The notes under the pieces: model-generated
Told to the model about the DNA's origin: nothing
Seen by the model: only the letters and a program-made list of their open reading frames with translations
The model's database searches: none
Made by a program: the position numbers and the translations under genes
Assembly (NCBI GenBank): GCA_002269645.1
Contig: NIVC01000754.1
Coordinates: 310,001-374,000 of the forward strand
From: Macrostomum lignano
Lineage: Eukaryota
Direction of reading: 5' to 3'
DNA length: 64,000 bases
Shown: one piece after another, positions 15,547 through 64,000 of the stretch
Layout of the letters: each line of letters opens with the position of its first letter
How positions within the stretch are numbered: the first letter of the stretch is position 1

Positions 15547-39390
<23,844 letters not shown>

Positions 39391-42289: not shown

Positions 42290-45200
42290 ATGGTCTACAA
42301 CTACACTAAGCCCCGCGGGCCAGTGGCCGCCATGTACAGCAGCCCCGGGCCGAAGTACGGCCTACCCGGCCTGGTTGGCCATCCGCACCATGACCCCCGC
42401 TCCGTACACAACCGCGGCCCGGCATATCCGTTCGGCGTTCGTCACGGCAAATATGCCGACGACTCGAGTCCGGGACCTTGCTACATGCCGCAGGAGAAGA
42501 CTTATCGTGACGGTCGGGACGCGGCGCCGCAGTTCTCCCTATATGGCAGGCCGCGGGACAGCACCGCGTTCTCGGCTCCGGGACCGGGCGCCTACCGGCC
42601 CGAGGCGACATCAATGGACAAAGCGCCCAGCTACAGCTTCGGGATGCGGCACCAGCAGTTCCGGACTGACAACACGCCTGGTGAGTCTTGAAGGGTCTCA
42701 GGATGGTGTGTCTGCCAGGATGATGTGTCTCAAGATGTTGTGTCTCTGGCTGTTGTGTCTGCCAGGATGATGTGTCTCAAGATGTTGTGTCTCTGGCTGT
42801 TGTGTCTCAGGATGGTGTGTCTTTCAGGATGTTGTATCTCAGGATGTTGTGTCTCAGGATGGTGTGTCTGTCAGGATGATGTGTCTCAAGATGTTGTGTC
42901 TTTGGCTGTTGTGTCTCAGGATGGTGTGTCTGTCAGGATGATGTGTCTCAAGATGTTGTGTCTTTGGCTGTTGTGTCTCAGGATGGTGTGTCTGTCAGGA
43001 TGATGTGTCTCAAGATGTTGTGTCTTTGGCTGTTGTGTCTCAGGATGGTGTGTCTGTCAGGATGATGTCTCAAGATGTTGTATCTCAGGATGTTGTATCT
43101 CAGGATGTTGTATCTCAGGATGTTGTATCTCAGGATTTTGTATCTCAGGATGTTGTGTCTCAGGATGTTGTATCTCAGGATGTTGTATCTCAGGATGTTG
43201 TATTTCAGGATGTTGTATCTCAGGATGTTGTATTTCAGGATGTTGTATCTCAGGATGTTGTATCTCAGGATGTTGTGTCTTTCAGGATGTTGTATCTCAG
43301 GATGTTGTGTCTCAGGATGGTGTGTCTCAGGATGTTGTATCTCAGGATGTTGTATCTCAGGATGTTGTATCTCAGGATGTTGTATCTCAGGATGTTGTAT
43401 CTCAGGGTGTTGTGTCTCAGGATGTTGTATCTCAGGATGTTGTATCTCAGGGTGTTGTGTCTTTCAGGTTGTTGTGTCTTTCAGGGTGTTGTCTTTCAGG
43501 GTGTTGTGTCTTTCAGGGTGTTGTGTCTTTCAGGTTGTTGTGTCTTTCAGGGTGTTGTCTTTCAGGGTGTTGTGTCTTTCAGGGTGTTGTGTCTTTCAGG
43601 GTGTTGTGTCTTTCAGGTTGTTGTGTCTTTCAGGGTGTTGTGTCTTTCAGGTTGTTGTGTCTTTCAGGGTGTTGTATCTCAGGGTGTTGTGTCTTTCAGG
43701 TTGTTGTGTCTTTCAGGGTGTTGTCTTTCAGGGTGTTGTGTCTTTCAGGGTGTTGTGTCTTTCAGGTTGTTGTGTCTTTCAGGGTGTTGTCTTTCAGGGT
43801 GTTGTGTCTTTCAGGGTGTTGTGTCTTTCAGGGTGTTGTGTCTTTCAGGTTGTTGTGTCTTTCAGGGTGTTGTGTCTTTCAGGTTGTTGTGTCTTTCAGG
43901 GTGTTGTATCTCAGGGTGTTGTGTCTTTCAGGTTGTTGTGTCTTTCAGGGTGTTGTCTTTCAGGGTGTTGTGTCTTTCAGGGTGTTGTGTCTTTCAGGTT
44001 GTTGTGTCTTTCAGGGTGTTGTCTTTCAGGGTGTTGTGTCTTTCAGGGTGTTGTGTCTTTCAGGGTGTTGTGTCTTTCAGGTTGTTGTGTCTTTCAGGGT
44101 GTTGTGTCTTTCAGGTTGTTGTGTCTTTCAGGATGTTGAGACTTTTGTTGTTGTTGTATCTCAGGATGTTGTCTCAGTGCATCAGCATGATATTTCTAAC
44201 GATCGTTTAAGTAGCTATGGTGAATGCATGCCTTCCAAAAACCGCATCTTAACCCCTACAGGCCCCAACGCTTACTTACCCGACAGTATGGTGGGCAGAA
44301 GCATTCGCAGCCAGAAGAAGTCCGCGCCGGCCTATTCGCTCACGGGTCGCTCCAAGAACGGCGGGTTTCACGAGGATTTGCAGAAGGTGCGCTGGCAGCT
44401 CTGAGAAAATCTTTGCGTACTTATCGGCATTTGGCGAGGTGCTTTCTCACCCAGGCTGGGTTATTGTGTCCAACCAGCATACATGTAAAAGTAAAAGCTC
44501 CGGAGTTCAATGCCTTGGCATGGCCGCAATAAGATTCAATGTGAATCCACCATTAGCAATCCAGCCCGATAAAGACTTGTGTCTTCTTTACTCTCCTCTA
44601 TCCCCTCTCCTCTCTCCTCTCTCCCCTCTCCTCTCTCCTCTCTCCCCTCTCCCCTCTCCTCTCTCCTCTCTCCTCTCTCCTCTCTCCTCTCTCCTCTCTC
44701 CTCTCTCCTCTCTCCTCTCTCCCTCTCCCCTCCCCTCTCTCCTCTCTCCTCTCTCTCTCTCTCTCCTCTCTCCTCTCTCCTCTCTCCCTCTCCTCTCTCC
44801 CCTCTCCTCTCTCCTCTCTCCTCTCTCCTCTCTCCCTCTCCTCTCTCCCCTCTCCTCTCTCCCCTCTCCTCTCTCCTCTCTCCTCTCTCCCCTCTCCCCT
44901 CTCCTCTCTCCTCTCTCCCCTCTTCTCTCTCCCCTCTACTCTCTCCTCTCTCCCCTCTCTTCTCTCCTCTCTCCCCTCTCCTCTTTCCTCTTTCCTCTCT
45001 CCTCTCTCCCCTCTCCCCTCTCCTCTCTCCTCTCCCCACTCTCTTCTCTCCTCTCTCCTCTCTCCTCTCCCCACTCTCTTCTCTCCTCTCTCCTCTCTCC
45101 TCTCCCCACTCTCTTCTCTCCTCTCTCCTCTCTCCCCTCTCCTCTCTCCACTCTCCCCTCTCTCCTTGCTCCTCTCTTTTGTTAAAAACTTGAACTCTCC

Positions 45201-47366: not shown

Positions 47367-49769
<2,403 letters not shown>

Positions 49770-49772
49770 ATG

Positions 49773-50065
49773 AGTAGTAGGGCGAATTATGATACTGCCG
49801 CACTAGCACTGGCGAGATAGGCGGCAATGCAAATGTATAGGGAAAAATACACTGCGGAGATATGAGCCCTATCTCTGTGCATTGGGGACGGCTAAGCACT
49901 GCAGAGATATGAGCTCTATCTCTGTGCATTGGGGACGGCTAAGCACTGCAGAGATATGAGCTCTATCTCTGTGCATTGGGGACGGCTAAGCACTGCAGAG
50001 ATATGAGCTCTATCTCTGTGCATTGGGGACGGCTAAGCACTGCAGAGATATGAGCTCTATCTCTG
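49773..50065. repeat. Left terminal inverted repeat: 89-bp unique end + four full and one partial 47-bp units
   Basis: Reverse complement of 57876-58168; ATGAG anchors at 49862, 49909, 49956, 50003 and 50050. Confidence 0.95.
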
Positions 50066-50341
50066 CTTAACACAGGAGTGATAGGAGAAGAGGCGGCCTA
50101 TTTCTTTACACTGGAGATGGTTAACACTGCAGAGATAGGAGGAGAGGCGGCCTATCTCTTTGCATTGGGGTGGTTAACACTGCAGAGATAGGAGGAGAGG
50201 CGGCCTATCTCTTTGCATTGGGGGTGGTTAACACTGCAGAGATAGGAGGAGAGGCGGCCTATCTCTTTGCATTTGGGGGTGGTTAACACTGCAGAGATAA
50301 GATGTTAATCTATGTAATTGGAAATAATGTTTGCGAAAGAG

Positions 50342-50402
50342 CCAATCACAGAGCCCGGAGTGGGATGGGTGGTTTGGGGTGGTTCGGTCGAGGGTATATA
50401 AG
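50342..50402 (+). promoter_or_regulatory. Putative Pol II promoter (CCAAT at 50342; TATATAAG at 50395) for the left-end gene
   Basis: Motifs lie ~110-165 bp upstream of ATG 50507; an AATAAA at 51490 follows the ORF. Confidence 0.55.
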
Positions 50403-50506
50403 CCCCGAAATTGACAAGAAAGAATTCTCAATTTTTCAAATCCAAAATTTCATCCGAAATTTTCCTCAGCTTTTAACTTTTGTGAGTTTTCAATTGCGAA
50501 AGGAAA

Positions 50507-51283
50507 ATGGACATCTGTGAAGGCTATAAGGCACAAGTCCAGGAGTTTGAAGGACAAAAATTTATCGCTATTCGCAAATTTTACCGACACGGCAGCACGG
50601 CAAGTCTGAAGCCAGGCGTCCCAGGATTCAACCTGAATGTTCACCAATGGAAGAAATTGAAGGAGGTGAAACGCTCACTTGTGATTTCTGCACGCAACAA
50701 CGAGCCCAAGGTCGTGAAACTCGGCTTCGATAAGTTTGTGGAAGTCAAAGGCGGCATCATTTGGCTCAAACGGCTGCCGGAAGATTGCTGCGAGGAGTTT
50801 TTGAGACGAAACGCCGTACCACTGACTCCGCCGCTGTGGCAGAAGCTCTGGAAAATCGCCTCCTGGATCGACGGTCAGCTGGTGGCTCCCTTGAGGAACA
50901 CAATGCAGTACGAGCTGGAGTCTGATGAGGAAGAGGAGGAAGAGGACAAGAAGCTCAAGTTGGAGGCTGACCAGGACACGAAGCCCATAATGGAGACTGA
51001 TGAGGGCGGAGATCATGCTGATGACGAGGACGTTAGCTCGCCCACAAGGCCGCGCATTGTGACTGAGCCAATCACATCCACACCGATACCTTCGGTTGAT
51101 TCTGATGCTGGACTGCTTCCGCAGCGGGACACCAACCTTGAGGAAGATCCGGTGTGGTATCAGTTCAGGGCGCATGCAGCGGCTTCGACGGTGAGCAGCA
51201 GCAGCAGGAAGCGAAAGCTGCCATTTCAACTTCGTCGGCAGGACGCGATGAGGCTGCAGCCCAATGTTCGCTTTGATAACTGA
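50507..51283 (+). CDS. PC4-like (transcriptional coactivator p15 / ssDNA-binding fold) protein with a probable second PC4 repeat and an acidic tail, 258 aa
   Basis: KAQVQEFEGQKFIAIRKFY...LKPGVPGFNLNVHQWKKLKE parallels the PC4 consensus (VSVRDFKGKVLIDIREYW...KPGRKGISL..EQW..LKE). A second, weaker repeat reads KFVEVKGGIIWLKR...VPLTPPLWQKL, followed by an E/D-rich stretch. Confidence 0.75.
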   Translation: MDICEGYKAQVQEFEGQKFIAIRKFYRHGSTASLKPGVPGFNLNVHQWKKLKEVKRSLVISARNNEPKVVKLGFDKFVEVKGGIIWLKRLPEDCCEEFLRRNAVPLTPPLWQKLWKIASWIDGQLVAPLRNTMQYELESDEEEEEEDKKLKLEADQDTKPIMETDEGGDHADDEDVSSPTRPRIVTEPITSTPIPSVDSDAGLLPQRDTNLEEDPVWYQFRAHAAASTVSSSSRKRKLPFQLRRQDAMRLQPNVRFDN

Positions 51284-51603
51284 ACAGCTAGAATGCTTTG
51301 AATGCATTGGACTAACTAAATTACTTTTAGCTTGCACATGATTATCCAGCCTGACGGCACTATGCTGTTTTTTATCTCTGCTATTTCTGAAATGCTGGTG
51401 TGCGAGTGTTTTAGTGTTCGTTTTTATGGATTGTTTGCTTTCGGAAAATACACCGACTGTTACGATGTTAGAGGTTTCAATCTGACAGTAATAAATTAAT
51501 TTGCCACTCGTTTCTCTATCATTTAATTGTAATATAAATTTCTACTTAAGAAAAAATACTGTACAGCTAGAGCAGGTGGATAGGCACGTATCTTGATAAA
51601 CCC

Positions 51604-52674
51604 ATGATGGAGAAAATTTATTTGAAACCTGAGCAACCGGCTAGTTTTTCTTGTGCCTCAAAGTTGCTGCATGAAGTGAGGCAAAGAGGTGATCGAATAT
51701 CTGCAAAGAGCATTGAGCAGTGGCTCAGCGAGCAGCCAGTGCACACTCTGCACAAGCCAGCTAGGAGGCGATATCCAAGGGCCCCAATCATAGTGCGCGC
51801 AATCGATGATCAGTGGGAACTTGACTTAGTGGAAATGATTCCATTCGCAAAGCATAATAAAGGCTACAAATATATTCTCACATGCATTGACGTGCTCTCA
51901 AAATGTGCTTGGGCCAAGGCACTGAAAAATAAATCTGCTGCAGAAGTGAAGTCAGCATTCGAGAGCATACTGAGAAGTTCAAAGCGCCAGCCACGCACAG
52001 TTCGCACAGATCAGGGGAAGGAATTTATCAACTCTACTTTCCGTCAATACTGCATTGACAGAGGGATTCTGGCTTTCCCAACTAACAGCGAGCAGAAGGC
52101 AGCTGTCATTGAGCGATGGAATCGAACTCTGAAAAGTAGAATGTGGCGCTACTTCACCTACAAGAGCACACTGCACTGGCTTGATGTGCTGCCTAAGCTG
52201 GTAAAATCCTACAACAATACCTACCACAGAAGCATCAAAATGGCACCCACTAGTGTCTGCAAAGAGAATGAATCTGAAGTGTGGATGAACCTGTACGATG
52301 GAAAAGCAGTCGAGACTCTAGAAAAATTAAAGAAGCCTAAGTTCGCTGAAAACCAGTCAGTGAGAATTTCCAATGCTCCACGGATATTCAAAAAGGGATA
52401 CAAAGCGAGCTGGAGTGAGGAAGTGTACACCGTGGTGAGCAGAGCCCCAAAACATTATCCCTACATGTACAAGATTAAAGACATGCGGGGGCAAGAGATT
52501 CGAGGACTCTTCCATGAGCACGAGCTGCAGGCTGTCCCGGACTCACAGCGGCTGTATGTGATTGAGAAGATCCTGAAAACGGAGAAGCGGAAGGGAAAAA
52601 TTCGCTATCTGGTGAAATGGGCGGGCTACGACTCGACTGGCTGGGTGGATGAAAAAGACTTAAGAAAGGTTTAG
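51604..52674 (+). CDS. int: Polinton retroviral-like (rve) DDE integrase with C-terminal chromodomain, 356 aa, intact
   Basis: WELDLVEM (D), VRTDQGKEF (D), VIERWNRTLK (E; D-x33-E); C-terminal YVIEKILK...YLVKWAGYDSTGWV chromodomain. Confidence 0.95.
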   Translation: MMEKIYLKPEQPASFSCASKLLHEVRQRGDRISAKSIEQWLSEQPVHTLHKPARRRYPRAPIIVRAIDDQWELDLVEMIPFAKHNKGYKYILTCIDVLSKCAWAKALKNKSAAEVKSAFESILRSSKRQPRTVRTDQGKEFINSTFRQYCIDRGILAFPTNSEQKAAVIERWNRTLKSRMWRYFTYKSTLHWLDVLPKLVKSYNNTYHRSIKMAPTSVCKENESEVWMNLYDGKAVETLEKLKKPKFAENQSVRISNAPRIFKKGYKASWSEEVYTVVSRAPKHYPYMYKIKDMRGQEIRGLFHEHELQAVPDSQRLYVIEKILKTEKRKGKIRYLVKWAGYDSTGWVDEKDLRKV

Positions 52675-52702
52675 CTTTGGCACAGCCCTCATCATGTAGT
52701 TT

Positions 52703-53521
52703 ATGATTATAATGCGAACTATTTTGATTAACAGTGAGCATGCTGAAGGTACTCCTAGTGACTTTAATTTTTACCTGCCTTCACCTATTTACTTGGATCG
52801 AAATGTGGACTATGAGGCAGGTCTGGCTGAAATCCATCTGCCTGCTGCATGGTTCAATGTTGACGAGCCTTACTGCTTCACTGTCTCAGATGGAAGAGAG
52901 CATGAGGCCCTGGTTCTTCAACCCGGACGCTTTGCTAGAGTGGAGGAGCTGGTGGAGCGCCTGAATGAGCTGCTGGCCAACTCTGATTCGCTGTTCTTTG
53001 ATGCAATGAGTGACAGGGAGTCTGAGATGGAGGCTGATGAGTCCGGCCTGATGGGGCGTAGTGGCAACAGGGAATTTGGTATGAAGTTCGAAATCCGCAA
53101 CTCACGAACTGTGGTGCACAACAACACTGCGAGAGCAGAGCTGTTTCTTCCATCTAGTAAAATTCTGCATTGGCTGGGATTTGGAAACCAGGCTGTGAAA
53201 ATCCAGCCAGGGAGCCGCGTATCCGAGCATTGCATTGGCTGCCCGCGCACCAGCTTAATCAATGTGCACTGCAGTATCGTTGAGTCAACTAATTGCAACT
53301 GGAGCTCCTTGTTGAGAACAGTTGGAATGAAAGCTGGCATTGAATGGGGCAACTATCAAACAAAAATATTTAAGAAAACAATATTCTTCCCGATTCAACG
53401 AATCAGTCTTCTTCACAGCATTCGAGTTCAGCTGCGGGACATCTATGGTTGCCCACTGATTGCACAGACTCACAGCCCTGTTCTGCTTACAGTTCAAATT
53501 CAGGAGAAACGCATTCAATGA
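52703..53521 (+). CDS. Minor capsid protein (penton, single jelly-roll), 272 aa
   Basis: GTPSDFNFYLPSPIYLD..YEAGLAEIHLPAAWFNV and the C-terminal INVHCSIVE...LLRTV...FFPI...IRVQLRDIYG match the Polinton penton pattern; the position between integrase and MCP also fits. Confidence 0.82.
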   Translation: MIIMRTILINSEHAEGTPSDFNFYLPSPIYLDRNVDYEAGLAEIHLPAAWFNVDEPYCFTVSDGREHEALVLQPGRFARVEELVERLNELLANSDSLFFDAMSDRESEMEADESGLMGRSGNREFGMKFEIRNSRTVVHNNTARAELFLPSSKILHWLGFGNQAVKIQPGSRVSEHCIGCPRTSLINVHCSIVESTNCNWSSLLRTVGMKAGIEWGNYQTKIFKKTIFFPIQRISLLHSIRVQLRDIYGCPLIAQTHSPVLLTVQIQEKRIQ

Positions 53522-53895
53522 ACTACCAGCAGCTAATCCAGCAATATTCGGGGGTGAGGACAGGACACGAAAAGCCTGCACTCTATGGCTGTGGGAGCTT
53601 CCCAGGGATCATGACATACCAGCCTCCGCCAGCGGCTATATCATCATCATCAGCCTCGACGCTTAGCAACGTCAGGCGCAAAAGAAATACTGAAGCAAGT
53701 CCGAAACGATTGAAGAAAAAGAAGGGCACCCGAAAGGCAACTGGTGGAAATCGCAGTAAGAGGTCGAGCAAGGCTAGTGGGAAAAAGCTTAAGAATAGGA
53801 AGACGAAAGCAAAGAAGAATAGAGCAGGCGGAGGAAAGCGAAAGCAAAAAGTCAGCAAGAAAACTGTGAAACGCGTGCTCGACTCTCTGTCATAG
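53518..53895 (+). CDS. Small Lys/Arg-rich core-protein-like ORF (pVII-like), 125 aa
   Basis: The ATG overlaps the penton stop (ATGA); N-terminus MNYQQLIQQY...LYGCGSFPG followed by a highly basic tail; ends 2 nt before the MCP ATG. Confidence 0.65.
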   Translation: MNYQQLIQQYSGVRTGHEKPALYGCGSFPGIMTYQPPPAAISSSSASTLSNVRRKRNTEASPKRLKKKKGTRKATGGNRSKRSSKASGKKLKNRKTKAKKNRAGGGKRKQKVSKKTVKRVLDSLS

Positions 53896-53897
53896 AC

Positions 53898-54662
53898 ATG
53901 GCTTACGGATTCAATCCCAGACTTGATTTATTTAAGACGCCCGTTCTACAAACCTGCATTGAAAAAGCTACTTATGTTGATATTCACCCAGTTAATTCCA
54001 TTGTTGCAAACTCTCCCATTGAATTTGACTGCCACCAATCTGCCGATGAATATACAGATCTGCTTAATTCTTTTCTTTATATTCGCTGCCGCCTTGTGAG
54101 ACTGGATGGGGGTTTGCTGAGGGAGGATGTTCGAGATGGAGATGGCATCATCACCGAGCGCAGAGACAGTGACGTGCACCCAGAAAATTTTGTTCTGTCT
54201 ACAGCCTTCTCAGATGTAATTGTGAGCATTAACCAGCGAGTGGTGTCTGGTGGAGACCAGCTCTATCCCTACCATGCGTACTTCAAAGCACTAATGAGCT
54301 CATCCGATGCCCAGCAACTAAAACTTTACCCTGCTGGCTTCCTGGAGCCGAACTCGGCAGCTGAAGAGCACACGGAGAGCCACAGGGAATCCCAATGGAT
54401 GGAGTATGCGGGGCCGCTCTTCAGCGATGTTTTCCAGTGCCCAGTGTTTCTGCTAAGCAATCTGCACCTGCACATCAAACTGGTCCCCAGCGATGGGGCC
54501 TTTGCCATCAGAACCCCGAATGCAAACAACGCGGCATACCGAATGGAAATCTCTCACAGCATTCTGCATCTTCGCCGAGTCAAAGTGATGCCCCACATCA
54601 GCCTGGCCCATGAGCAGGGGCTGACAAACCAAAATGCACTGTATCCCATCGAGCGAAGCTGA
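53898..54662 (+). pseudogene. Major capsid protein (double jelly-roll), C-terminally truncated at 254 aa
   Basis: LDLFKTPVLQTCIE, HPVNSI..SPIEF, EYTDLLNSFLYIRCRL, FSDVIVSINQRVVS, LYPYHAYFKALM and YPIER match the N-terminal half of Polinton MCPs; the ORF stops abruptly where an unrelated 18-bp repeat begins. Confidence 0.85.
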
Positions 54663-54965
54663 CTCGCTGCTGGCTGCTGACTCGCTGCTGGCTGCCGACT
54701 CGCTGCTGGCTGCCGACTCGCTGCTGGCTGCCGACTCGCTGCTGGCTGCCGACTCGCTGCTGGCTGCTGACTCGCTGCTGACGTCATGGTCCACCCAAGG
54801 GTGGTCATACTCGATCCACGAGTGGTCATCCTCCATCCACGAGTGGCCATTCTCCATCCATGAGTGGTCATTCTCCATCCATGAGTGGTCATTCTCCATC
54901 CATGAGTGGTCATTCTCCATCCATGAGTGGTCATTCTCCTGCTCCATCCAGGAGTGCTCAACCAT
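54453..54965 (-). CDS. Hypothetical repeat ORF (ENDHSWM-type and SESAAS-type repeats) running antisense into the MCP remnant
   Basis: ATG at 54965; 21-bp and 18-bp codon-phased repeats; no recognisable homology. Confidence 0.3.
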   Translation of the reverse strand: MVEHSWMEQENDHSWMENDHSWMENDHSWMENDHSWMENGHSWMEDDHSWIEYDHPWVDHDVSSESAASSESAASSESAASSESAASSESAASSESAASSESASLDGIQCILVCQPLLMGQADVGHHFDSAKMQNAVRDFHSVCRVVCIRGSDGKGPIAGDQFDVQVQIA

Positions 54966-55846
54966 AGAAAAGGCAAGCAGTTAAAAGCTGACAGTGTTTA
55001 CTGGCTGCAACTGAGTGTCATAAGCAACTGGGAGTGAATATTGGAAATCTTTTTCGTAAGTCTTTATTGCTGCAATACTGGTACAATATCCACACTTACA
55101 AGCTAGTAGATGCTGGTTATATTTTTTTGGTTCTCCCTTAAGCTAGCTCTCTGCATGCATATTCTATTGATCCCTATTCGTAAAAGTTCGTTTCTATTTG
55201 CCTCCTACGCAGACTCAATCGGTAAAAAATGCAAAATGAAGCCAATAGTTAATTAACAAACCAATCACCGAGTGGAAAAATGCTGACATTATATATATAT
55301 ATTTTAAAAAAATTATCGAATTCACATGGTGCAATCATAGTCAATAAACAATGCATGGAACAATGAATTACAAATACAGACGAGAGTTTAGAAGCAGAAA
55401 TATAGCTGAAAAGTTCAATAATTAAAGAATGAGGAAACACCGCGTCAAAGCAGTAGAAAGAAAATTATACCTAATCAATCGCACCAAGCATACGAAACAT
55501 CACCAATTTATTGAAAGTATGTTATGTTGATTTTAATTTGTTAAATTCAACTGTATATGTTTCACCTACTTTTCAAATAATTTTTTTTACCTCGGATACC
55601 AAAAAAATATTGGTTGCCACTACGAGCTACGAGCTTTTTTTAAAACTAATTTGGAAATGAAAACTGAAAACTTATAAGCAAGATTCCTAGAAGCGAATAC
55701 AGAGTTATGAGATGATCAAATCATTAATTAATGTACCTACTTTCAACTTTAAAAAGCTAGTTGAAATAAAGTTTTAGCAATAATTGCAATAAATGGGTAG
55801 ATTTCTCACTCCACACAGAAAGCAAAAAAGTACAAAAATTGCTTAG

Positions 55847-57205
55847 TCACAGCGGCACAATTCTAATACGATTTTCGAAAATCGTTACCTCGTACCCAGC
55901 CCTGCCGACAGGAGGCAGAAAGAAGGCAACTCCAGCTGGCACGGGTGGAGTTTCGGATTGAGAAGCTGGAATTGTAGAGGCTGCAGCTGGGGCGGCTGGA
56001 GCAGCTGGGGCAGCCAGAGCAGCTGGGGCGGCTGGAGCAGCTGGGGCGGCCAGAGCAGCTGGGGCGGCCAGAGCAGCTGGGGCGGCCAGAGCAGCTGGGG
56101 CGGCTGGAGCAGCTGGGGCGGCCAGAGCAGCTGGGGCGGCTGGAGCAGCTGGGGCGGCTGGAGCAGCTGGGGCGGCCAGAGCAGCTGGGGCGGCCAGAGC
56201 AGCTGGGGCGGCCAGAGCAGCTGGGGCGGCCAGAGCAGCTGGGGCGGCCAGAGCAGCTGGGGCGGCCAGAGCAGCTGGGGCGGCCAGAGCAGCTGGGGCG
56301 GCCAGAGCAGCTGGGGCGGCCAGAGCAGCTGGGGCGGCCAGAGCAGCTGGGGCGGCCAGAGCAGCTGGGGCGGCCAGAGCAGCTGGGGCGGCCAGAGCAG
56401 CTGGGGCGGCCAGAGCAGCTGGGGCGGCTGGAGCTGCAGGTGGCACAATTGCATTATGCGACTCATTGTCGCTGCCCTCCTCTTCTAGGATTTCCATTTC
56501 GTGGTCGTCTTCAATTAGATGAAGTTGTTTTCCAGCAATCACCGGAACCGAAGAGACAGGTTGCTGCTGCTGCTGACCAGCGTTGAATTCCCTGAGGAAC
56601 TGATCCAGGACATCTTCCTCTATGAAGTTTATGACAGCAGCAGCCTCGACTCCAGCAGCCTCGACTCCAGCGGCCTCGACTCCAGCAGCCTCGACTCCAG
56701 CAGCCTCGACTCCAGCAGCCTCGACTCCAGCAGCCTCGACTCCAGCAGCCTCGACTCCAGCAGCCTCGACTCCAGCAGCCTCGACTCCAGCAGACAGCTC
56801 AACTTCAAATTCTGCAGCTGCTGAAGACCCGCTTGGCCTCATCCTCTTCAATGTAGAGTCAATTACTTGACTCAAGTGAGCTGATAGCAGACTCCTGCTG
56901 GCTCCTTTTTTCTGCTGGATCTTCTTTTCTCTCTCGTTGCTCTTTTTGATGGCGCGGATTACTTTCCAGCGGTTACTTTCTTGCTTTTTCTTGTCATCGC
57001 TGACGATCCTGTGTCCTCGATGATATGCTGGAATTTTTCCCTCCTGCAGAGCTTCGACGGTGCCGCACTGGTCGCATGCCAACCAGCATGAGACCAGACA
57101 GTTCTCATTCTCGTGGTGTCTTGGGGACACGCCTCCAAGCAGGCACACTTCGCAGCTTATACAGACCTCATAGAGGTCTCTATGACAACTTTTAAAAGTT
57201 TTCAT
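55847..57205 (-). CDS. Hypothetical element accessory protein, 452 aa: Cys-rich N-terminus, basic helix, (AGVEA)n, acidic spacer, (APAAL)n, short hydrophobic beta-rich C-terminus
   Basis: Long ORF with non-repetitive flanks in one frame; C-x2-C-x2-C-x14-C-x3-C-x3-C-x2-C cluster; TATATAAGC box ~100 bp upstream (57314-57306). Confidence 0.65.
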   Translation of the reverse strand: MKTFKSCHRDLYEVCISCEVCLLGGVSPRHHENENCLVSCWLACDQCGTVEALQEGKIPAYHRGHRIVSDDKKKQESNRWKVIRAIKKSNEREKKIQQKKGASRSLLSAHLSQVIDSTLKRMRPSGSSAAAEFEVELSAGVEAAGVEAAGVEAAGVEAAGVEAAGVEAAGVEAAGVEAAGVEAAGVEAAAVINFIEEDVLDQFLREFNAGQQQQQPVSSVPVIAGKQLHLIEDDHEMEILEEEGSDNESHNAIVPPAAPAAPAALAAPAALAAPAALAAPAALAAPAALAAPAALAAPAALAAPAALAAPAALAAPAALAAPAALAAPAALAAPAALAAPAALAAPAAPAAPAAPAAPAALAAPAAPAAPAALAAPAALAAPAALAAPAAPAAPAALAAPAAPAAPAAASTIPASQSETPPVPAGVAFFLPPVGRAGYEVTIFENRIRIVPL

Positions 57206-57305
57206 TTTGAAAGAGAAAGAGTTGTTTTTTAGAAGTAGTAAGGTTTTTAAAAATCATTTTATACAATTTGTTTTTGTCTATTTGTTTATTTGTACTTGCG
57301 TGGCT

Positions 57306-57314
57306 GCTTATATA
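57306..57314 (-). promoter_or_regulatory. Putative TATA box (TATATAAGC) for the right-end gene
   Basis: Same 9-mer as at the left end, in mirror position relative to the TIR. Confidence 0.5.
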
Positions 57315-57656
57315 GTAATTTGTACATGCATGCCCTCTCCTTATCATATCGTATATGAACATCCAGCCATGCTCAGGTAATAATTACTTTACCGTTATAG
57401 AGGCCACCGGCTGTAATTAGTGTATCCCCCCGTCCCCTTATCCAGGTAAGCAACACCAGCCGTCCTCTGTGCAGTTGTAAAACTTTATAACCTTACCCTA
57501 ACACAGAGCACAGAGATTGGCCACCCCTCTTATCTCTGCAATGTTTAGCCGTTCCCAATGCACAGAGATAGGATCCTCTCCGCAGTGTATTTTTCCTATA
57601 TCCTTTTTGCCGCCTATCTCGCCAGTGCTAGTGCGGCAGTATCATGAATCGCCTCC

Positions 57657-58168
57657 ATCTCCGCAGTGCTTAGCCGTCCCCAATGCACAGAGATAGAGCT
57701 CATATCTCTGCAGTGCTTAGCCGTCCCCAATGCACAGAGATGGGGCTCATATCTCTGCAGTGCTTAGCCGTCCCCAATGCACAGAGATAGAGCTCATATC
57801 TCTGCAGTGCTTAGCCGTCCCCAATGCACAGAGATGGGGCTCATATCTCTGCAGTGCTTAGCCGTCCCCAATGCACAGAGATAGAGCTCATATCTCTGCA
57901 GTGCTTAGCCGTCCCCAATGCACAGAGATAGAGCTCATATCTCTGCAGTGCTTAGCCGTCCCCAATGCACAGAGATAGAGCTCATATCTCTGCAGTGCTT
58001 AGCCGTCCCCAATGCACAGAGATAGAGCTCATATCTCTGCAGTGCTTAGCCGTCCCCAATGCACAGAGATAGGGCTCATATCTCCGCAGTGTATTTTTCC
58101 CTGTACATTTGCATTGCCGCCTATCTCGCCAGTGCTAGTGCGGCAGTATCATAATTCGCCCTACTACT
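57657..58168. repeat. Right terminal inverted repeat: nine 47-bp units + 89-bp unique end
   Basis: GCAGTGCTTAGCC anchors every 47 bp from 57663 to 58039; the terminal segment matches the left end with one mismatch seen. Confidence 0.95.
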
Positions 58169-58657
58169 CATATGCTTTGTCCATGTCCATGTTGTCATTG
58201 CTTTTCATGGGCGTAACTAGTTGTTTTTTAGTTTTTTGAAACTTTCGTCAGGCTCTCAGGAGTAGTCCGGAATGGTTAAAAACCCAAAAACATGAAAATT
58301 TAGCTTACCTTCATTGGTGGTGGCAGCCAGATTTGTTAGTCTCCTATGTGCTTTCAATGAGAACTGGGTTTGAAATGGGGCCGATTTCAAATTTAAGCTG
58401 CTTTTTTATGAGCAAAAGTTTAGTTAATTTCATTAGGTCTCCACGCCTCTGTTGAAGTTCAGGTATACAAAATCAATCCCCATGAAGAATCTCCCCACCC
58501 TAATCCCCCATTCCCCATGTTCCAGTTGATGGGTTGAAGCTGCATAAAAATAATGCCAAAATTTGAAATCAGCACCATCAAAAACCAATTTTGATTTAGA
58601 GACATAATTACTATCCTATCAAAACTGCAACTTATATACCTATAATTCAAGAAGTCT

Positions 58658-58912: not shown

Positions 58913-59708
58913 TGGCACACAATTATTTACACACAAATTAGAAATATTTACCCTGCCATTTTTTTCTTCGGCTGTAGTTCTCATTTTCGATGCAGTAAGC
59001 CTGGCACTCGAACCCGTGGCTTCGGAGCCCTTCTGCGTTGAAGTCTCGTCAGCCCTGCACCAGATGTAGTTCCCCAGGCTGGCAGAAGTTGCACCAAATT
59101 TTATTCAATAATTTACGAGGAAATAAGATAGCCACAGGCTTCGCAAGGTTTATGAAATATTATTTATCATATAGCATCTCCGTCATCAAGCCAGCATATC
59201 CCGAACACTGTAGGGCTTTGACTGCCGAGGTGACTACCTCTTGGCCATAGACACTAGCAAGAGTAATTAATACTGCAAAACTCTAGGCAAGCATCGATTT
59301 GAACTAATTTTTCTGATATATCTGGGTACTAAAAACCTTTCTAACCCGCCTCACGCCGCTGACAAGCTCAGTAGTAGTCTCGGAACATAGATAGAATTTT
59401 TTGCGCTGCTTTTTCATTTTCAGAAACATTTTCAACAATAAAGTGAAAACAATATTTTCACGTAGATCGTTAACCAGGGTGTATTTATTAGTTGATTGAT
59501 TACTTGTCAGTTTTATTAGCATTGGAACCCGTCACCAAAGGTAGTTCATGGAGCATGTCTAATTCATAGACTTCAGCGCTCATCTTGAGTAGATCTCAAG
59601 TCTGAAAAATGGAGGTAAAAAATTAACTTATCCGATATGTTTAATATATTATTTCAATATTCGCAGGCCTTTTTATTAAATGGGAATCTCTCACCTTTCA
59701 TGCTCAGA

Positions 59709-62700
59709 TTATTGCAAAATCATTCTTTTGCTTATTTTTCTTCTTCTTGTTCTTTTGCGTTTACTTTTGCTTTTGCTTTTGCTTCTGCTTCTGCTATTGC
59801 GACGGGGAGCAACTTGAGCCAAGCGACGCTTCACCCAGCGCTGAACGGTTCGACGACCGCGGTATCGCATTGATCGGCTGATTTTTTTTACCTTGCGAAA
59901 AATGATTTTCTTAAAACGGCGTCGGCTAGACCAACTTCGAAGCACCTGGCGTTTTACAATCCTCCTGCCGCGCCTCAGCATCTTCCGTTTCTCTCTTCGC
60001 AGTTGAATTCGGATAGTTCGTCGGAGAACTTTCATGCCTTGCCTTAGTTTCTTTTTGATGCGTCTAGAACTTAGTCTGGAGACTCGAACGCGTCTTCTCA
60101 CTGACTTTCTTGATGCTCGCCGAGCCCGTCGAGCTGCTCGGCGTTTGAGTCGTCTTAGTATTGATCGACTAGCCGCACGACTGGCTCTTCGTACATTACG
60201 TCTGACCCTACTGACAGGCTTAGAAACTTCTTTCAAAATGTCTTGCAAACAGGCCAGCTTACTAGACTGCTCTAAAAAGTGAAAAAGACAAGTGCGTAAA
60301 TTAAAACAATAGTTAGATCAGGGAGAAAATATGGGGAACAAGGAATAAAATATGCAAGAAGACAATAGTGCTTACTTGGCAAACAAACTCTAACACCACG
60401 AAGAGCCGCTTTAAAGTTCTTCTTTGCGATTTTTAGCTTAGCATTCACAGATGAAACAAAATCTTTCTTTTCCGTCTCCGAAAAATCTCTAGAACCGACA
60501 CGTTCCAACGACTTTCGAAGAAGACGCTTTGCATTGCGCCACAGAGCTATGTCTTTTTCAGACAAAATAGTGAAGCACTCCTCGCTTTCAGAAATGCCTA
60601 ATGAGTCTCCGAAAAACTTCAGCAGCTCATTCGAAGACGCAAAAAGACGTCTCTTTGAAGCGCGCCTACGTCTTCGGATTGCCAGTTTGCGTCGTCGGAT
60701 TGCAAGTCTGCGTCTTCGGATTGCAGCACCTCTTTTGGCAGCGCGTCTCTTGGCAGCGCGTCTCTTTGCAGCGCGTCTCTTTGCCGCGCGTCTCTTTGCT
60801 GCGCGTCTCTTGGCAGCGCGTCTCTTGGCAGCGCGTTTGCGTCTTCGGATTGCTAGTCTGCGTCTTCGGATTGCAGCGCGTCTCTTTGCAGCGCGTCTCT
60901 TTGCAGCGCGTCTCTTGGCAGCGCGTCTCTTTGCCGCGCGTCTCTTTGCTGCGCGTCTCTTTGCAGCGCGCCTACGTCTTCGAATTGCCAGTTTGCGTCG
61001 TTGGATTGCGAGTCTGCGTCTTCGGATTGCAGCGCGTCTCTTTGCTGCGCGTCTCTTGGCAGCGCGTCTCTTTGCAGCGCGTCTTCGTCTTCGGATTGCC
61101 GCGCGTCTCTTTGCTGCGCGTCTCTTTGCAGCGCGTCTCTTGGCAGCGCGCCTACTTCTTCGGATTGCCAGTTTGCGTCTTCGGATTGCCAGTTTGCGTC
61201 TACGGATTGCCAGTTTGCGTCTTCGGATTGCTAGTTTGCGTCTACGGATTGCCGCGCGTCTTTTGGCAGCGCGTCTCTTAGCAGCGCGTCTCTTTGCAGC
61301 GCGTCTCTTTGCTGCGCGTCTTTTGGCAGCGCGTCTCTTTGCAGCGCGCCTACGTCTTCGGATTGCCAGTTTGCGTCGTCGGATTGCGAGTCTGCGTCTT
61401 CGGATTGCAGCACGTCTCTTTGCAGCACGTCTCTTTGCTGCGCGTCTCTTGGCAGCGCGTCTCTTTGCAGCGCGTCTTCGTCTTCGGATTGCCGCGCGTC
61501 TCTTGGCAGCGCGTCTCTTTGCAGCGCGTCTCTTGGCAGCGCGTCTCTTTGCCGCGCGTCTTTTTGCTGCGCGTCTCTTTGCAGCGCGCCTACGTCTTCG
61601 GATTGCCAGTTTGCGTCGTCGGATTGCGAGTCTGCGTTTTCGAATAGTCATTCTGCGTCTTCGGATTGCCAGTCTGCGTCTTCGGATTGCCAGTCTGCGT
61701 TTTCGAATTGCCAGTCTGCGTCTTCGGATTTGGAGTCTGCGTCTACGGATTGCCGCGCGTCTCTTTGCTGCGCGTCTCTTTGCTGCGCGTCTCTTTGCAG
61801 AGCGCCTACGTCTTCGAATTGCCAGTTTGCGTCGTCGGATTGCGAGTCTGCGTCTTCGGATTGCAGCGCGTCTCTTTGCAGCGCGTCTCTTTGCAGCGCG
61901 TCTCTTGGCAGCGCGTCTCTTTGCAGCGCGTCTCTTTGCAGCGCGTCTTCGTCTTCGGATTTGGAGTCTGCGTCTACGGATTGCCGCGCGTCTCTTGGCA
62001 GCGCGTCTCTTTGCAGCGCGTCTCTTGGCAGCGCGTCTCTTTGCCGCGCGTCTCTTTGCTGCGCGTCTCTTTGCAGCGCGCCTACGTCTTCGGATTGCCA
62101 GTTTGCGTCGTCGGATTGCGAGTCTGCGTCTTCGGATTGCAGCGCGTCTCTTTGCAGCGCGTCTCTTGGCAGCGCGTCTCTTGGCAGCGCGTCTGCGTCT
62201 TCGGATTGCCAGTTTGCGTCGTCGGATTGCGAGTCTGCGTTTTCGAATAGCCAGTCTGCGTCTTCGGATTGCCAGTCTGCGTTTTCGAATTGCCAGTCTG
62301 CGTCTTCGGATTGCGAGTCTGCGTCTTCGGATTGCAGCGCGTCTCTTGCAGCGCGTCTCTTTGCAGCGCGTCTCTTGGCAGCGCGCCTGCGTCTTCGGAT
62401 TGCCAGTTTGCGTCGTCGGATTGCGAGTCTGCGTCTTCGGATTGCAGCGCGTCTCTTTGCAGCGCGTCTCTTTGCAGCGCGTCTCTTGGCAGCGCGCCTG
62501 CGTCTTCGGATTGCCAGTTTGCGTCGTCGGATTGCGAGTCTGCGTCTTCGGATTGCAGCGCGTCTCTTTGCAGCGCGTCTCTTTGCAGCGCGTCTCTTGG
62601 CAGCGCGTCTCTTTGCCGCGCGTCTCTTTGCTGCGCGTCTCTTTGCAGCGCGCCTACGTCTTCGGATTGCCAGTTTGCGTCGTCGGATTGCGAGTCTGCG

Positions 62701-64000
62701 TCTTCGGATTGCAGCGCGTCTCTTTGCAGCGCGTCTCTTGGCAGCGCGTCTCTTGGCAGCGCGTCTGCGTCTTCGGATTGCCAGTTTGCGTCGTCGGATT
62801 GCGAGTCTGCGTTTTCGAATAGCCAGTCTGCGTCTTCGGATTGCCAGTCTGCGTTTTCGAATTGCCAGTCTGCGTCTTCGGATTGCGAGTCTGCGTCTTC
62901 GGATTGCAGCGCGTCTCTTGGCAGCGCGTCTCTTTGCAGCGCGCCTACGTCTTTGGATTGCCAGTTTGCGTCGTCGGATTGCGAGTCTTCGTCTTCGGAT
63001 TGCAGCGCGTCTCTTTGCAGCGCGTCTCTTTGCAGCGCGTCTCTTTGCAGCGCGTCTCTTGGCAGCGCGTCTCTTTGCAGCGCGTCTTCGTCTTCGGATT
63101 TGGAGTCTGCGTCTACGGATTACCGTGCGTCTCTTGGCAGCGCGTCTCTTTGCAGCTCGTCTCTTGGCAGCGCGTCTCTTGGCAGCGCGTCTCTTGGCAG
63201 CGCGTCTCTTGGCTGCGCGCCTACGTCTTCGGATTGCCAATTTGCGTCGTCGGATTGCGAGTCTGCGTCTTCGGATTGCAGCGCGTCTCTTAGCCGCGCG
63301 TCTCTTTGCTGCGCGTCTCTTGGAAGCGCGTCTGCGTCTTCGGATTGCGAGTCTGCGTCTTCGGATTGCAGCACCTCTTTTGGCAGCGCGTCTCTTGGCA
63401 GCGCGTCTCTTTGCAGCGCGTCTCTTTGCCGCGCGTCTCTTTGCCGCGCGTCTCTTTGCCGCGCGTCTCTTTGCTGCGCGTCTCTTGGAAGCGCGTCTGC
63501 GTCTTCGGATTGCGAGTCTGCGTCTTCGGATTGCAGCACGTCTCTTTGCAGCGCGTCTCTTTGCTGCGCGTCTCTTGGCAGCGCGTCTGCGTCTTCGGAT
63601 TGCCAGTTTGCGTCGTCGGATTGCGAGTCTGCGTCTTCGGATTGCAGCGCGTCTCTTAGCCGCGCGTCTCTTTGCTGCGCGTCTCTTGGCAGCGCGTCTG
63701 CGTCTTCGGATTGCGAGTCTTCGTCTTCGGATTGCAGCGCGTCTCTTTGCAGCGCGTCTCTTGGCAGCGCGTCTCTTGGCAGCGCGTCTCTTTGCAGCGC
63801 GTCTGCGTTTTCGGATTGCCAGTTTGCGTCTACGGATTGCTGCGCGTCTCTTGGCAGCGCGTCTCTTTGCAGCGCGTCTCTTGGCAGCGCGTCTCTTTGC
63901 CGCGCGTCTCTTTGCTGCGCGTCTCTTTGCAGCGCGCCTACGTCTTCGGATTGCCAGTTTGCGTCGTCGGATTGCGAGTCTGCGTCTTCGGATTGCAGCG
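59709..64000 (-). CDS. Very large Arg/Ala/Lys-rich repetitive basic protein (AAKRR and LAIRRRR repeats), 5' end outside the window; exons >64000-60376 and 60271-59709; one 1-nt frameshift near 62347
   Basis: Repeat variation is almost entirely synonymous (GCA/GCC/GCT/GCG). A 104-nt GT-AG intron (CCAA|GTAAGC ... CTTTTTAG|AG) joins the repeat-plus-unique domain in phase to a 187-codon Arg-rich exon; AATAAA lies ~30 nt after the stop. Confidence 0.82.

What the first reader, a model, noticed from the sequence alone, without database searches (positions are those of the whole stretch)
59709..64000. Giant polycationic repeat protein (AAKRR)n with a small embedded helical domain
About 1,390 codons are visible and the gene continues beyond the window. 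The repeats AAKRR and LAIRRRR/K vary almost only at synonymous Ala and Arg positions, which argues for selection on protein rather than a neutral satellite. A unique ~110-aa segment (LFASSNELLKFFGDSLG...VCLPKQSSKLACLQDILKEVSK, with Cys residues) spans a canonical intron, followed by a non-repetitive Arg-rich tail ending in an SKSKSK motif. Candidate roles: protamine-like sperm nuclear protein far larger than usual, or a secreted cationic glue/cement or antimicrobial granule protein. K/R-rich repeat regions are known in the Macrostomum adhesive protein ap1, but no lectin or vWD domain is visible here.
Basis: partly seen in the sequence, partly recalled or inferred. Interest (0 to 1): 0.75.

Follow-up and report, generated by a model that had tools for sequence, protein, structure and literature searches.

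The report
Giant arginine-rich repeat protein gene
The end of this window holds the last two exons of an unannotated gene of the flatworm Macrostomum lignano that encodes a huge, almost purely positively charged repeat protein with no detectable relatives; it looks like a real gene, but this copy has one frame-breaking base loss and its role (packing nucleic acid, or a secreted glue-like polycation) is still open.

Summary
The window is Macrostomum lignano Mlig_3_7, NIVC01000754.1:310001-374000. An array of 15-nt (AAKRR) and 21-nt (LAIRRR[RK]) units at 60647-64000 reads on into 108 unique codons. A canonical 104-nt GT-AG intron (60375-60272) follows, then a 169-residue non-repetitive Arg/Lys/Ser tail, a TAA stop (59711-59709) and AATAAA 32 nt later.

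Variation among units favours this frame. Of 36 distinct variant types, 22 are synonymous (30% expected). Of the 15 types present in at least 4 units, 13 are synonymous and 2 are Arg->Lys.

This may be a PacBio assembly error or a lesion in one of three near-identical copies of the region.

The unique domain and tail have no Pfam, PDB, protein-database, metagenome or viral relative.

It is not the known adhesive protein Mlig-ap1: that protein's repeats are Gly/Arg/Lys-rich, and none of its 18 primers nor its epitope occurs here.

I read it as a real, unannotated polycation gene. Nucleic-acid or sperm-chromatin binding is slightly favoured over a secreted glue-type role. The N-terminus and expression are unseen.

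The parts
59672..59677 (-). AATAAA polyadenylation-type signal, starting 32 nt after the stop codon
   Evidence: read directly from the sequence
59709..60271 (-). Last exon. It supplies the second and third bases of a split Lys codon, then the end of the unique domain (QSSKLACLQDILKEVSK), then a 169-aa non-repetitive tail (R 34%, K 13%, S 12%; RRAS x2, RRNS, SRSRSKSKSKSKRKR). The TAA stop is at 59711-59709. This frame has 0 stops; the other five frames have 3-13.
60272..60375 (-). Predicted intron: 104 nt, CAA|GTAAGC ... TTTTTAG|AG, 32% GC. It moves the reading frame exactly as needed to join the two open frames.
   Evidence: Inferred from sequence; no RNA evidence.
60376..60646 (-). Unique, non-repetitive part of the upstream exon (LFASSNELLKFFGDSLG...RGVRVCLP). 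It is the only region with acidic residues and is predicted as a helical hairpin. No Pfam, PDB or database relative was found.
60647..64000 (-). Coding tandem array, cut by the window end. It holds AAKRR pentads (15 nt) and [LA]AIRRR[RK] heptads (21 nt) in blocks of 2-8 pentads, 1-8 heptads and one extra Arg. Composition: R 47%, A 28%, K 12%, I 7%, L 5%; 660 Lys+Arg, no Asp/Glu, and 2 Gly+Pro in 1,118 residues.
62335..62348 (-). Aberrant 14-nt unit (a 1-nt loss in a short T/G run) that breaks the AAKRR frame. It sits at the edge of a 308-nt stretch that is 100% identical to a copy 572 nt away.
61648..61651 (-). ATGA. The TGA ends the frame-shifted (acidic LQRDA/SEDAD) reading that comes from upstream. 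The overlapping ATG is the only Met codon of the AAKRR frame in the array. Both arise from one variant heptad (MTIRKRR).

Best explanation
This is the 3' part (two exons) of a real minus-strand gene of Macrostomum lignano that is missing from the GenBank annotation.

What it encodes:
- At least 1,395 residues are visible, about 171 kDa, with more than 750 net positive charges.
- More than 1,100 residues are Ala/Arg/Lys pentads and Leu-Ala-Ile-Arg heptads. This part has no acidic residues and almost no Gly or Pro, so it should form helices once its charge is neutralised.
- A 108-residue helical hairpin domain follows, then a 169-residue Arg/Lys/Ser tail.

How it arose: the array grew by unequal crossing-over of 15- and 21-nt units. 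Selection on the protein left mainly synonymous and Arg<->Lys variants at high copy number.

How it works (inferred): it binds and condenses a polyanion electrostatically. I think the most likely partner is nucleic acid. In that case it is a sperm-nuclear-basic-protein or arginine-rich-motif type condenser, with the Ser-rich tail (RRxS, SR/SK runs) as a phosphorylation switch and the hairpin as a protein-protein contact.

The frame break at 62335-62348 is either an uncorrected long-read error or a lesion in this one of three near-identical copies of the region.

My estimates: that this is a genuine coding gene on this strand, about 0.7. That the partner is nucleic acid or chromatin, given a genuine gene, about 0.5-0.55.
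For: Shown:
- Frame-specific constraint. In the AAKRR frame 202 differences from consensus are synonymous and 74 are not (29% synonymous expected). The other two same-strand frames give 5/270 and 35/240.
- By distinct variant types the count is 22 synonymous to 14 non-synonymous (binomial p about 1e-4). The other same-strand frames show no enrichment.
- Of the 15 variant types present in 4 or more units, 13 are synonymous. These include the first-position change AGA->CGA. The other 2 are Arg->Lys.
- The same frame runs without a stop from the array through 90 unique codons. A canonical GT-AG intron of exactly the right phase joins it to a 186-codon frame that has no start codon of its own near its 5' end. 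That frame is open in one frame only, keeps the basic composition without being repetitive, and ends in TAA followed by AATAAA.
- Control minisatellites in the same window with periods divisible by 3 show weaker skew by codon position, and several break frame often.
- The gene's absence from the annotation is expected. Transcripts overlapping repeat annotations were removed before GenBank submission (PMC5730564).

Inferred, in favour of a nucleic-acid partner:
- The array composition (Arg 47%, Ala 28%, Lys 12%) resembles protamine-like proteins. It does not resemble the Gly/Lys/His/Ser composition of flatworm glue polycations.
- There are no Cys-rich, lectin, vWD or EGF modules and no Thr/Ser glycosylation tracts.
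- The tail carries RRAS, RRNS and SRSRSKSKSKS motifs.
Against: - One frame-breaking 14-nt unit lies inside the array.
- No homologue of the unique domain or tail was found in 5.8 billion and 1.84 billion protein sets, Pfam, PDB sequences, PDB folds, JGI metagenomes or IMG/VR. There is therefore no comparative proof of constraint outside the repeats.
- Units are copies of each other, so variant counts are not independent events. Rare (young) variants are only weakly enriched for synonymous change, 9 to 12.
- Unit lengths of 15 and 21 nt keep the frame automatically.
- The genome is about 15% simple and tandem repeats, and this window has 89 tandem-repeat rows.
- The N-terminus is unseen, so a signal peptide cannot be excluded. 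No expression data were available.
- No known sperm nuclear basic protein is anywhere near this size, and 12% Leu+Ile is atypical for them (my own knowledge).
Confidence: 0.4

Rival explanations
1. The gene is real, but the product is a secreted polycation stored in gland vesicles. It would be a glue or cohesive, rhabdite, cement or prostate-gland component working like the KR regions of Mlig-ap1 or the separate ap3 proteins of other flatworms. It would bridge negatively charged glycans or surfaces and be released by a secreted polyanion.
For: - Flatworms are the one group where giant secreted polycationic low-complexity proteins are documented.
- Mlig-ap1 has more than 3,600 aa of KR regions with calculated pI above 14.
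- Tmed-ap3 is 3,700 aa, 88% G/R/K/H/S, and has a signal peptide. Mile-ap3a/b are similar.
- The gene-structure and constraint evidence is the same as for the best explanation.
Against: - The composition differs sharply: Gly 0.2% and Ala 28% here, with Arg far above Lys, against Gly/Lys(/His/Ser)-rich repeats in the known proteins.
- Double knock-down of ap1 and ap2 already removes the adhesive vesicles in M. lignano.
- None of the 18 Mlig-ap1 primers nor the epitope is in the window.
- The visible part has no Cys-rich or carbohydrate-binding module.
- A signal peptide cannot be checked.
Confidence: 0.25
2. This copy does nothing. It is either a decaying duplicate (pseudogene) of a polycation gene, or an ordinary minisatellite that expanded next to a small basic ORF and is not translated as a giant protein.
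For: - There is a frame-breaking 14-nt unit.
- The sequenced DV1 line has extra large chromosomes and 180-312 Mb of duplicated sequence.
- Two more collinear copies of this region, 95-99.6% identical, are in the assembly, so one copy could decay freely.
- The window is saturated with minisatellites.
- Synonymous variants could have been inherited by copying.
- Rare variants are close to neutral expectation.
Against: - There is only one frame break in 3.35 kb. It sits at the edge of a perfect 308-nt duplicate in a PacBio/Canu assembly polished with short reads, where an assembly error is plausible.
- High-copy variants are all synonymous or Arg->Lys.
- The intact unique exon, splice sites, tail ORF and AATAAA argue against long-standing decay.
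Confidence: 0.2
3. The coding strand is the plus strand. A gene starting near ATG 60549 would read rightwards as (AARLF/AARLL)n and (RLRIASL)n, a Leu/Ala/Arg repeat protein, and the minus-strand frame would be its shadow.
For: - A 762-codon plus-strand ORF spans 60534-62822 and is open across the unique region.
- Its wobble positions coincide with those of the minus frame. It also shows synonymous enrichment: 164 to 111 by occurrence and 20 to 16 by type, p = 0.006.
Against: - The enrichment is weaker than for the minus frame.
- Its common replacements include the radical change Leu->Arg in 15 units; on the minus strand this is the synonymous AGA->CGA.
- It leaves unexplained the 186-codon minus-strand tail ORF of matching basic composition, the phase-correct GT-AG intron, and the stop plus AATAAA.
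- It is broken by the same 1-nt loss.
Confidence: 0.07
4. It is a cargo or core (DNA-condensing) protein gene of a mobile element or endogenous virus, linked to the integrase-bearing element next door.
For: An 8.4-kb element with 299-nt perfect inverted ends and an rve + chromodomain integrase ends 1.5 kb from the gene's stop codon.
Against: - The gene lies outside the inverted repeats.
- The unique domain and tail have no Pfam, PHROG-type or IMG/VR relative.
- It has a spliceosomal intron and a host-type poly(A) signal.
Confidence: 0.03

Closest known systems
Lys/Arg-rich (KR, 'GRK') regions of the flatworm adhesion protein Mlig-ap1, and the stand-alone ap3 proteins (Tmed-ap3, Mile-ap3a/b)
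   Same: - Same animal group, and for Mlig-ap1 the same species.
- Thousands of residues of tandem low-complexity sequence with more than half basic residues and extreme pI.
- Encoded by long in-frame minisatellite-like arrays that short-read assemblies and annotation pipelines break or drop.
   Different: - The repeat chemistry differs: Ala/Arg/Ile/Leu with almost no Gly, His, Ser or Pro here, against Gly/Arg/Lys(/His/Ser).
- Arg is far more abundant than Lys here.
- The repeats here are helix-prone rather than Gly-rich and flexible.
- No C-lectin/vWD/C8/TIL/EGF core is visible.
- No Mlig-ap1 primer or epitope is in the window.
- Signal peptide and gland expression are unknown.
- Homology cannot be claimed or excluded for low-complexity sequence.
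Protamines and protamine-like sperm nuclear basic proteins (my own knowledge of the family)
   Same: - Arg-dominated composition with Ala, Lys and some Ser, and no acidic residues.
- Ser in RRxS and SR contexts in the tail, as in phosphorylation-regulated protamines.
- The expected mode of action is charge neutralisation and condensation of DNA.
   Different: - At least 1,395 residues, against roughly 30-500.
- A strictly tandem pentad/heptad architecture.
- 12% Leu+Ile.
- No histone H1 winged-helix domain (no Pfam hit).
- Testis expression not shown.
Non-coding minisatellites of the M. lignano genome
   Same: - A tandem array of short units with higher-order blocks and recent internal duplications.
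- The genome is about 15% simple and tandem repeats.
   Different: - Frame-specific synonymous bias.
- The open frame continues into unique sequence, an intron, a basic tail, a stop codon and a poly(A) signal.

Membership tests
Mlig-ap1 (M. lignano adhesion protein 1) itself | Sequence identity with the published gene (scaf1170, GenBank MH586844): its ISH/RNAi primers and its antibody epitope SRKPRRKNRKSRKP | tested here: not met
   None of the 18 primers (up to 3 mismatches, both strands) nor the epitope in any of six frames occurs in the 64-kb window. The Mlig-ap1 protein sequence is not held as text, so no direct alignment was possible.
Flatworm glue polycations (Mlig-ap1 KR regions / ap3) | Repeats dominated by Gly, Arg and Lys (plus His and Ser in Tmed-ap3) | tested here: not met
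   The array is R 47%, A 28%, K 12%, I 7%, L 5%, G 0.2%, against the published 'GRK'/'GRKHS' composition.
Flatworm glue polycations (Mlig-ap1 KR regions / ap3) | Giant tandem low-complexity region with more than 50% basic residues | tested here: met
   660 Lys+Arg in 1,118 array residues, with no Asp or Glu.
Flatworm glue polycations (Mlig-ap1 KR regions / ap3) | N-terminal signal peptide, and expression in adhesive gland cells | not testable with these tools
   The 5' end lies beyond window position 64000. Five look-ups of window ORFs (four of them within 13 kb of the window end) found no record from which to extend. No expression data were available.
Protamine / protamine-like sperm nuclear basic proteins | Arg-rich (or Arg+Lys-rich) composition without acidic residues | tested here: met
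Protamine / protamine-like sperm nuclear basic proteins | Small size (tens to a few hundred residues), or a histone H1-type winged helix in the PL-I class | tested here: not met
   At least 1,395 residues are encoded. There is no Linker_histone or any other Pfam hit. Processing into small peptides cannot be excluded.
Protamine / protamine-like sperm nuclear basic proteins | Spermatid-specific expression and presence in sperm chromatin | not testable with these tools
   No transcript or proteome data were reachable. Literature searches found no such M. lignano protein.
Protein-coding exon (as opposed to a non-coding satellite) | Excess of synonymous over non-synonymous variation in one frame only | tested here: met
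   202 to 74 by occurrence and 22 to 14 by distinct type (p about 1e-4) in the AAKRR frame. The antisense wobble-matched frame is weaker (20 to 16). The other four frames show no enrichment. Caveat: the units are related by copying.
Protein-coding exon (as opposed to a non-coding satellite) | Uninterrupted reading frame | tested here: not met
   One 14-nt unit at 62335-62348 shifts the frame. Whether this is an assembly error or a real mutation is unresolved.
Protein-coding exon (as opposed to a non-coding satellite) | Spliced, polyadenylated transcript | not testable with these tools
   Only sequence signals were seen: GT-AG in the correct phase, and AATAAA starting 32 nt after the stop.
Transposon or viral protein | Match of the unique segment or tail to a known mobile-element or virus protein family | tested here: not met
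   No match in Pfam, IMG/VR by protein or by DNA, or the protein databases.

The most novel reading that the evidence does not exclude
Macrostomum makes a helix-prone poly-arginine protein of at least 170 kDa that acts as its sperm-chromatin (or RNA) condenser. That would be protamine function reached by minisatellite expansion, at 10-30 times the size of any known sperm nuclear basic protein, with a folded hairpin domain and a phosphorylatable tail. A stranger variant, if the 1-nt shift is real: the same array is read in two frames, giving a polycation fused to about 235 residues of the acidic LQRDA/SEDAD frame, a self-neutralising coacervate former.
Probability: 0.15. Interest if true: 0.75.

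Novelty: new variant of a known kind. Interest (0 to 1): 0.5.

Why it matters
- Flatworms are the only animals in which giant secreted polycations have been shown to drive a reversible glue. A second polycation gene in the model species, chemically different (Ala/Arg, helix-prone) and with no detectable relatives, would either add a component to that system or show the same design used inside the cell.
- If it packs sperm DNA, it would be far outside the size range of known sperm nuclear basic proteins.
- It is also a practical warning. The GenBank annotation of this genome removed transcripts that overlap repeat annotations, so coding minisatellite genes of this kind are systematically missing from protein databases.

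Tried and rejected
Homology and structure searches that found nothing:
- Unique domain, 136 aa spliced, against 5.8 billion proteins: no hit.
- The 95-aa exon part against 1.84 billion representatives: two hits, both spurious. One is a translated tandem repeat sharing GDSLG.IES..CF; the other is a plant PPR protein.
- An 843-aa query (repeats + domain + tail): no hit.
- Pfam: none. PDB sequences: only E = 0.2 noise.
- AlphaFold2 plus Foldseek against PDB: best E = 0.14, generic alpha-hairpins.
- JGI metagenomes and IMG/VR: none.
- BLASTP of the tail against the array: no alignment, probably because of low-complexity masking.

Extending the gene beyond 64000: five ORF look-ups found no record.

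Identity with Mlig-ap1: rejected on composition and primers. The Mlig-ap1 sequence itself is an image in the supplement.

Literature: 'AAKRR', 'Macrostomum + protamine', 'Macrostomum lignano + arginine-rich' and 'polycationic / repeat protein / flatworm' gave nothing on such a protein.

Other checks:
- Rfam over the window: no hits.
- Structure of the neighbouring ORF 53898-54662: pLDDT 33, unusable, so no fold search was run.
- Frame conservation as evidence for coding was discounted, because 15- and 21-nt units keep the frame by construction.
Full report
SOURCE. An inositol-polyphosphate-kinase ORF in the window (11775-12368) is on record in NCBI assembly GCA_002269645.1. The fetched locus is 100% identical to window 1775-22368. 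The window is therefore NIVC01000754.1:310001-374000. NIVC01 is the Mlig_3_7 assembly of the flatworm Macrostomum lignano, line DV1 (PMC5730564). That paper reports three relevant facts:
- Simple and tandem repeats make up about 15% of the genome.
- The assembly was made with PacBio/Canu and polished with Pilon.
- Transcripts overlapping repeat annotations were removed before GenBank submission.
Two other contigs carry collinear copies of the region at 95-99.6% identity.

THE OBSERVATION. The feature is real and lies on the minus strand.
- From 64000 down to 60647 there are 107 units of 15 nt (GCTGCAAAGAGACGC, AAKRR) and 79 units of 21 nt (CTGGCAATCCGAAGACGCAGA, LAIRRRR/K, or AAIRRRR at block starts). 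They form irregular blocks of 2-8 pentads, 1-8 heptads and one extra Arg codon.
- The unit occurs nowhere else in the window. A 30-nt double unit matches 80 times against 0 expected.
- The same frame continues into 90 unique codons (60646-60377).
- A CAA|GTAAGC donor and a TTTTTAG|AG acceptor define a 104-nt, 32%-GC intron (60375-60272). Its length shifts the frame exactly onto a 186-codon open frame.
- That second frame has no stop, while the other five frames have 3-13. It has no start codon near its 5' end, keeps an Arg/Lys/Ser-rich composition without being repetitive, and ends at TAA 59711-59709. AATAAA lies at 59677-59672.

One unit (62335-62348) is 14 nt long, so the AAKRR frame shifts there: 551 codons upstream and 843 downstream. 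The short unit lies at the edge of a 308-nt stretch that is identical to a copy 572 nt away. Read literally, the upstream frame passes into the acidic +1 frame (LQRDA/SEDAD) for about 235 codons, to a TGA at 61650-61648. That TGA overlaps (as ATGA) the only Met codon of the AAKRR frame. Two explanations are plausible, and I could not decide between them:
- an uncorrected long-read indel, in an array where short-read polishing cannot work;
- a real lesion in one of three copies of the region.

IS IT CODING?
- Differences from the unit consensus are 202 synonymous to 74 non-synonymous in the AAKRR frame (29% synonymous expected). The other two same-strand frames give 5/270 and 35/240.
- Units are copies of one another, so I also counted each distinct variant once. 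That gives 22 synonymous to 14 non-synonymous (p about 1e-4).
- Of the 15 variant types found in at least 4 units, 13 are synonymous. These include the first-position change AGA->CGA. The other two are Arg->Lys.
- Variants found in 3 units or fewer are 9 synonymous to 12 non-synonymous, only slightly above the neutral expectation.
- Other minisatellites in the window with periods divisible by three show weaker codon-position skew, and several break frame often.
- Frame conservation itself is weak evidence, because 15- and 21-nt units keep the frame automatically.
- The antisense frame whose wobble positions coincide with the gene frame is also open (60534-62822, AARLF/RLRIASL) and is also enriched (20 to 16, p = 0.006). 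Its common replacements include Leu->Arg, and it cannot explain the intron, tail, stop or poly(A) signal. I treat it as a shadow ORF.
- Overall I put the chance of a genuine minus-strand coding gene at about 0.7.

THE PRODUCT. The visible conceptual product has 1,395 residues (about 171 kDa).
- The array has 660 Lys+Arg, no Asp or Glu, and only two Gly+Pro in 1,118 residues (R 47%, A 28%, K 12%, I 7%, L 5%).
- The unique 108-residue segment is the only part with acidic residues (14 Asp+Glu against 22 Lys+Arg) and has 3 Cys.
- AlphaFold2 without an alignment predicts three helices with a long hairpin. Mean pLDDT is 63, and 70-80 over the hairpin.
- The tail is R 34%, K 13%, S 12%. It contains RRAS twice, RRNS once and SRSRSKSKSKSKRKR.

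RELATIVES. None were found.
- Pfam: no hit.
- 5.8 billion proteins with two different queries: no hit.
- 1.84 billion representatives: two spurious hits.
- PDB sequences, PDB folds (best E = 0.14), JGI metagenomes, and IMG/VR by protein and by DNA: nothing.
- The window's own ORF is also absent from the protein database. This agrees with the annotation filter described, so its absence says nothing about expression.

COMPARISON WITH WHAT IS KNOWN. The nearest documented things are flatworm glue polycations.
- Mlig-ap1 (5,407 aa) has Lys/Arg-rich regions A-C at both ends. They total more than 3,600 aa, with calculated pI above 14, around a lectin-vWD-C8-TIL-EGF core.
- Later papers describe those regions as Gly/Arg/Lys ('GRK') repeats. 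They show that in other flatworms the repeats form separate ap3 proteins. One example is Tmed-ap3: 3,700 aa, with a signal peptide, and 88% G/R/K/H/S.
- The present gene is not Mlig-ap1. That gene is on scaf1170 with 'GRK' repeats, and its primers translate to SGRKLTK-like sequence. None of its 18 primers nor its antibody epitope is in the window.
- The present gene shares the design (giant, tandem, more than half basic) but not the chemistry (Ala/Arg/Ile/Leu, almost no Gly, Arg far above Lys).
- By my own knowledge of sperm nuclear basic proteins, the composition is closer to protamine-like proteins. The size and tandem architecture are far outside that family, and there is no H1 winged helix.

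MECHANISM (inferred). Such a protein can only work by binding polyanions.
- The array lacks helix breakers and is rich in Ala, Arg, Lys and Leu, so it should be disordered alone and helical when its charge is neutralised.
- Several features make me favour a nucleic-acid or chromatin partner: Arg dominance, the absence of secretory-type modules and glycosylation tracts, and the RRxS and SR/SK motifs of the tail. This would be a sperm-nuclear-basic-protein-like or arginine-rich-motif-like condenser. I give it about 0.4 overall.
- A secreted glue or granule polycation gets about 0.25.
- A non-functional copy or an untranslated expansion gets about 0.2.
- A plus-strand gene gets about 0.07, and mobile-element cargo about 0.03.
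- The neighbouring integrase element ends 1.5 kb away. The gene lies outside its inverted repeats.

LIMITS. I could not fetch sequence beyond 64000, the two collinear copies at the right distance, or any transcript data. The N-terminus, expression, the reality of the frameshift and conservation outside the repeats all remain open. The steps that would settle them are listed in the next-steps field.

VERDICT. This is a real and unusual feature. It is most likely an unannotated gene for a giant Ala/Arg polycation with no detectable relatives. I class it as a new variant of a kind already known in flatworms. Its function is undetermined, and this copy has one unresolved frame break. Interest is moderate (0.5).

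Noticed in passing
window 49767-58174: An 8.4-kb element bounded by 299-nt, 100% identical inverted repeats (ends CATATGAGTAGTAGG...). The repeats carry 47-nt tandem arrays. Inside are a PC4-like ORF (50507-51283), an rve + chromodomain integrase ORF (51604-52674), unknown ORFs at 52703-53521 and 53898-54662, a Lys-rich ORF at 53449-53895, and a repeat-laden minus-strand ORF at 55847-57205. The perfect ends suggest a recent insertion of an integrase-type DNA transposon or a Polinton-like derivative. No target-site duplication could be made out.
   Followed up: partly
whole window, e.g. 1-2101, 4450-5988, 19100-20770, 25916-27292, 32307-34775, 42695-44172: Extreme minisatellite density: 89 tandem-repeat rows in 64 kb. 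Examples are a 16-mer x132, (AGAT)x418 and a 23-mer x107. Many give long spurious ORFs in several frames. This is the background against which any repeat ORF in this genome must be judged.
   Followed up: partly
window 11775-12368; loci L001-L003: The inositol-polyphosphate-kinase ORF is present, identical, on three contigs (NIVC01000754.1, NIVC01000894.1, NIVC01000875.1). Their flanks are collinear and 95-99.6% identical. This fits the duplicated large chromosomes of line DV1. L002 also carries a second, 194-aa IPK ORF about 9 kb downstream.
   Followed up: partly
window 42290-42691 and about 44210-44404 (+): Exons of an ODF3/SHIPPO-type sperm-tail PG-repeat gene. The intron between them is filled by a 15/17-nt minisatellite (42695-44172). 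This is a sperm gene 15 kb from the polycation gene, and the proximity may be coincidence.
   Followed up: no
window 61648-62352 (-): The +1 frame of the AAKRR array encodes an acidic repeat (LQRDA, SEDAD, SQSDDANWQ). After the 1-nt loss, the upstream basic frame would continue into it for about 235 codons. It would end at a TGA that overlaps, as ATGA, the only ATG of the basic frame.
   Followed up: partly
window 60534-62822 (+): An antisense shadow ORF of 762 codons (AARLF/AARLL and RLRIASL repeats). Its third codon positions coincide with those of the minus-strand gene frame, so it inherits part of the synonymous-site signal.
   Followed up: yes
window 55847-57205 (-): An ORF inside the inverted-repeat element with a Cys/His-rich N-terminus and two in-frame repeat runs: (AGVEA)x10 from a 15-nt array, and (PAALAA)n from an 18-nt array. 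This is another possible coding minisatellite. No significant family match was found.
   Followed up: no
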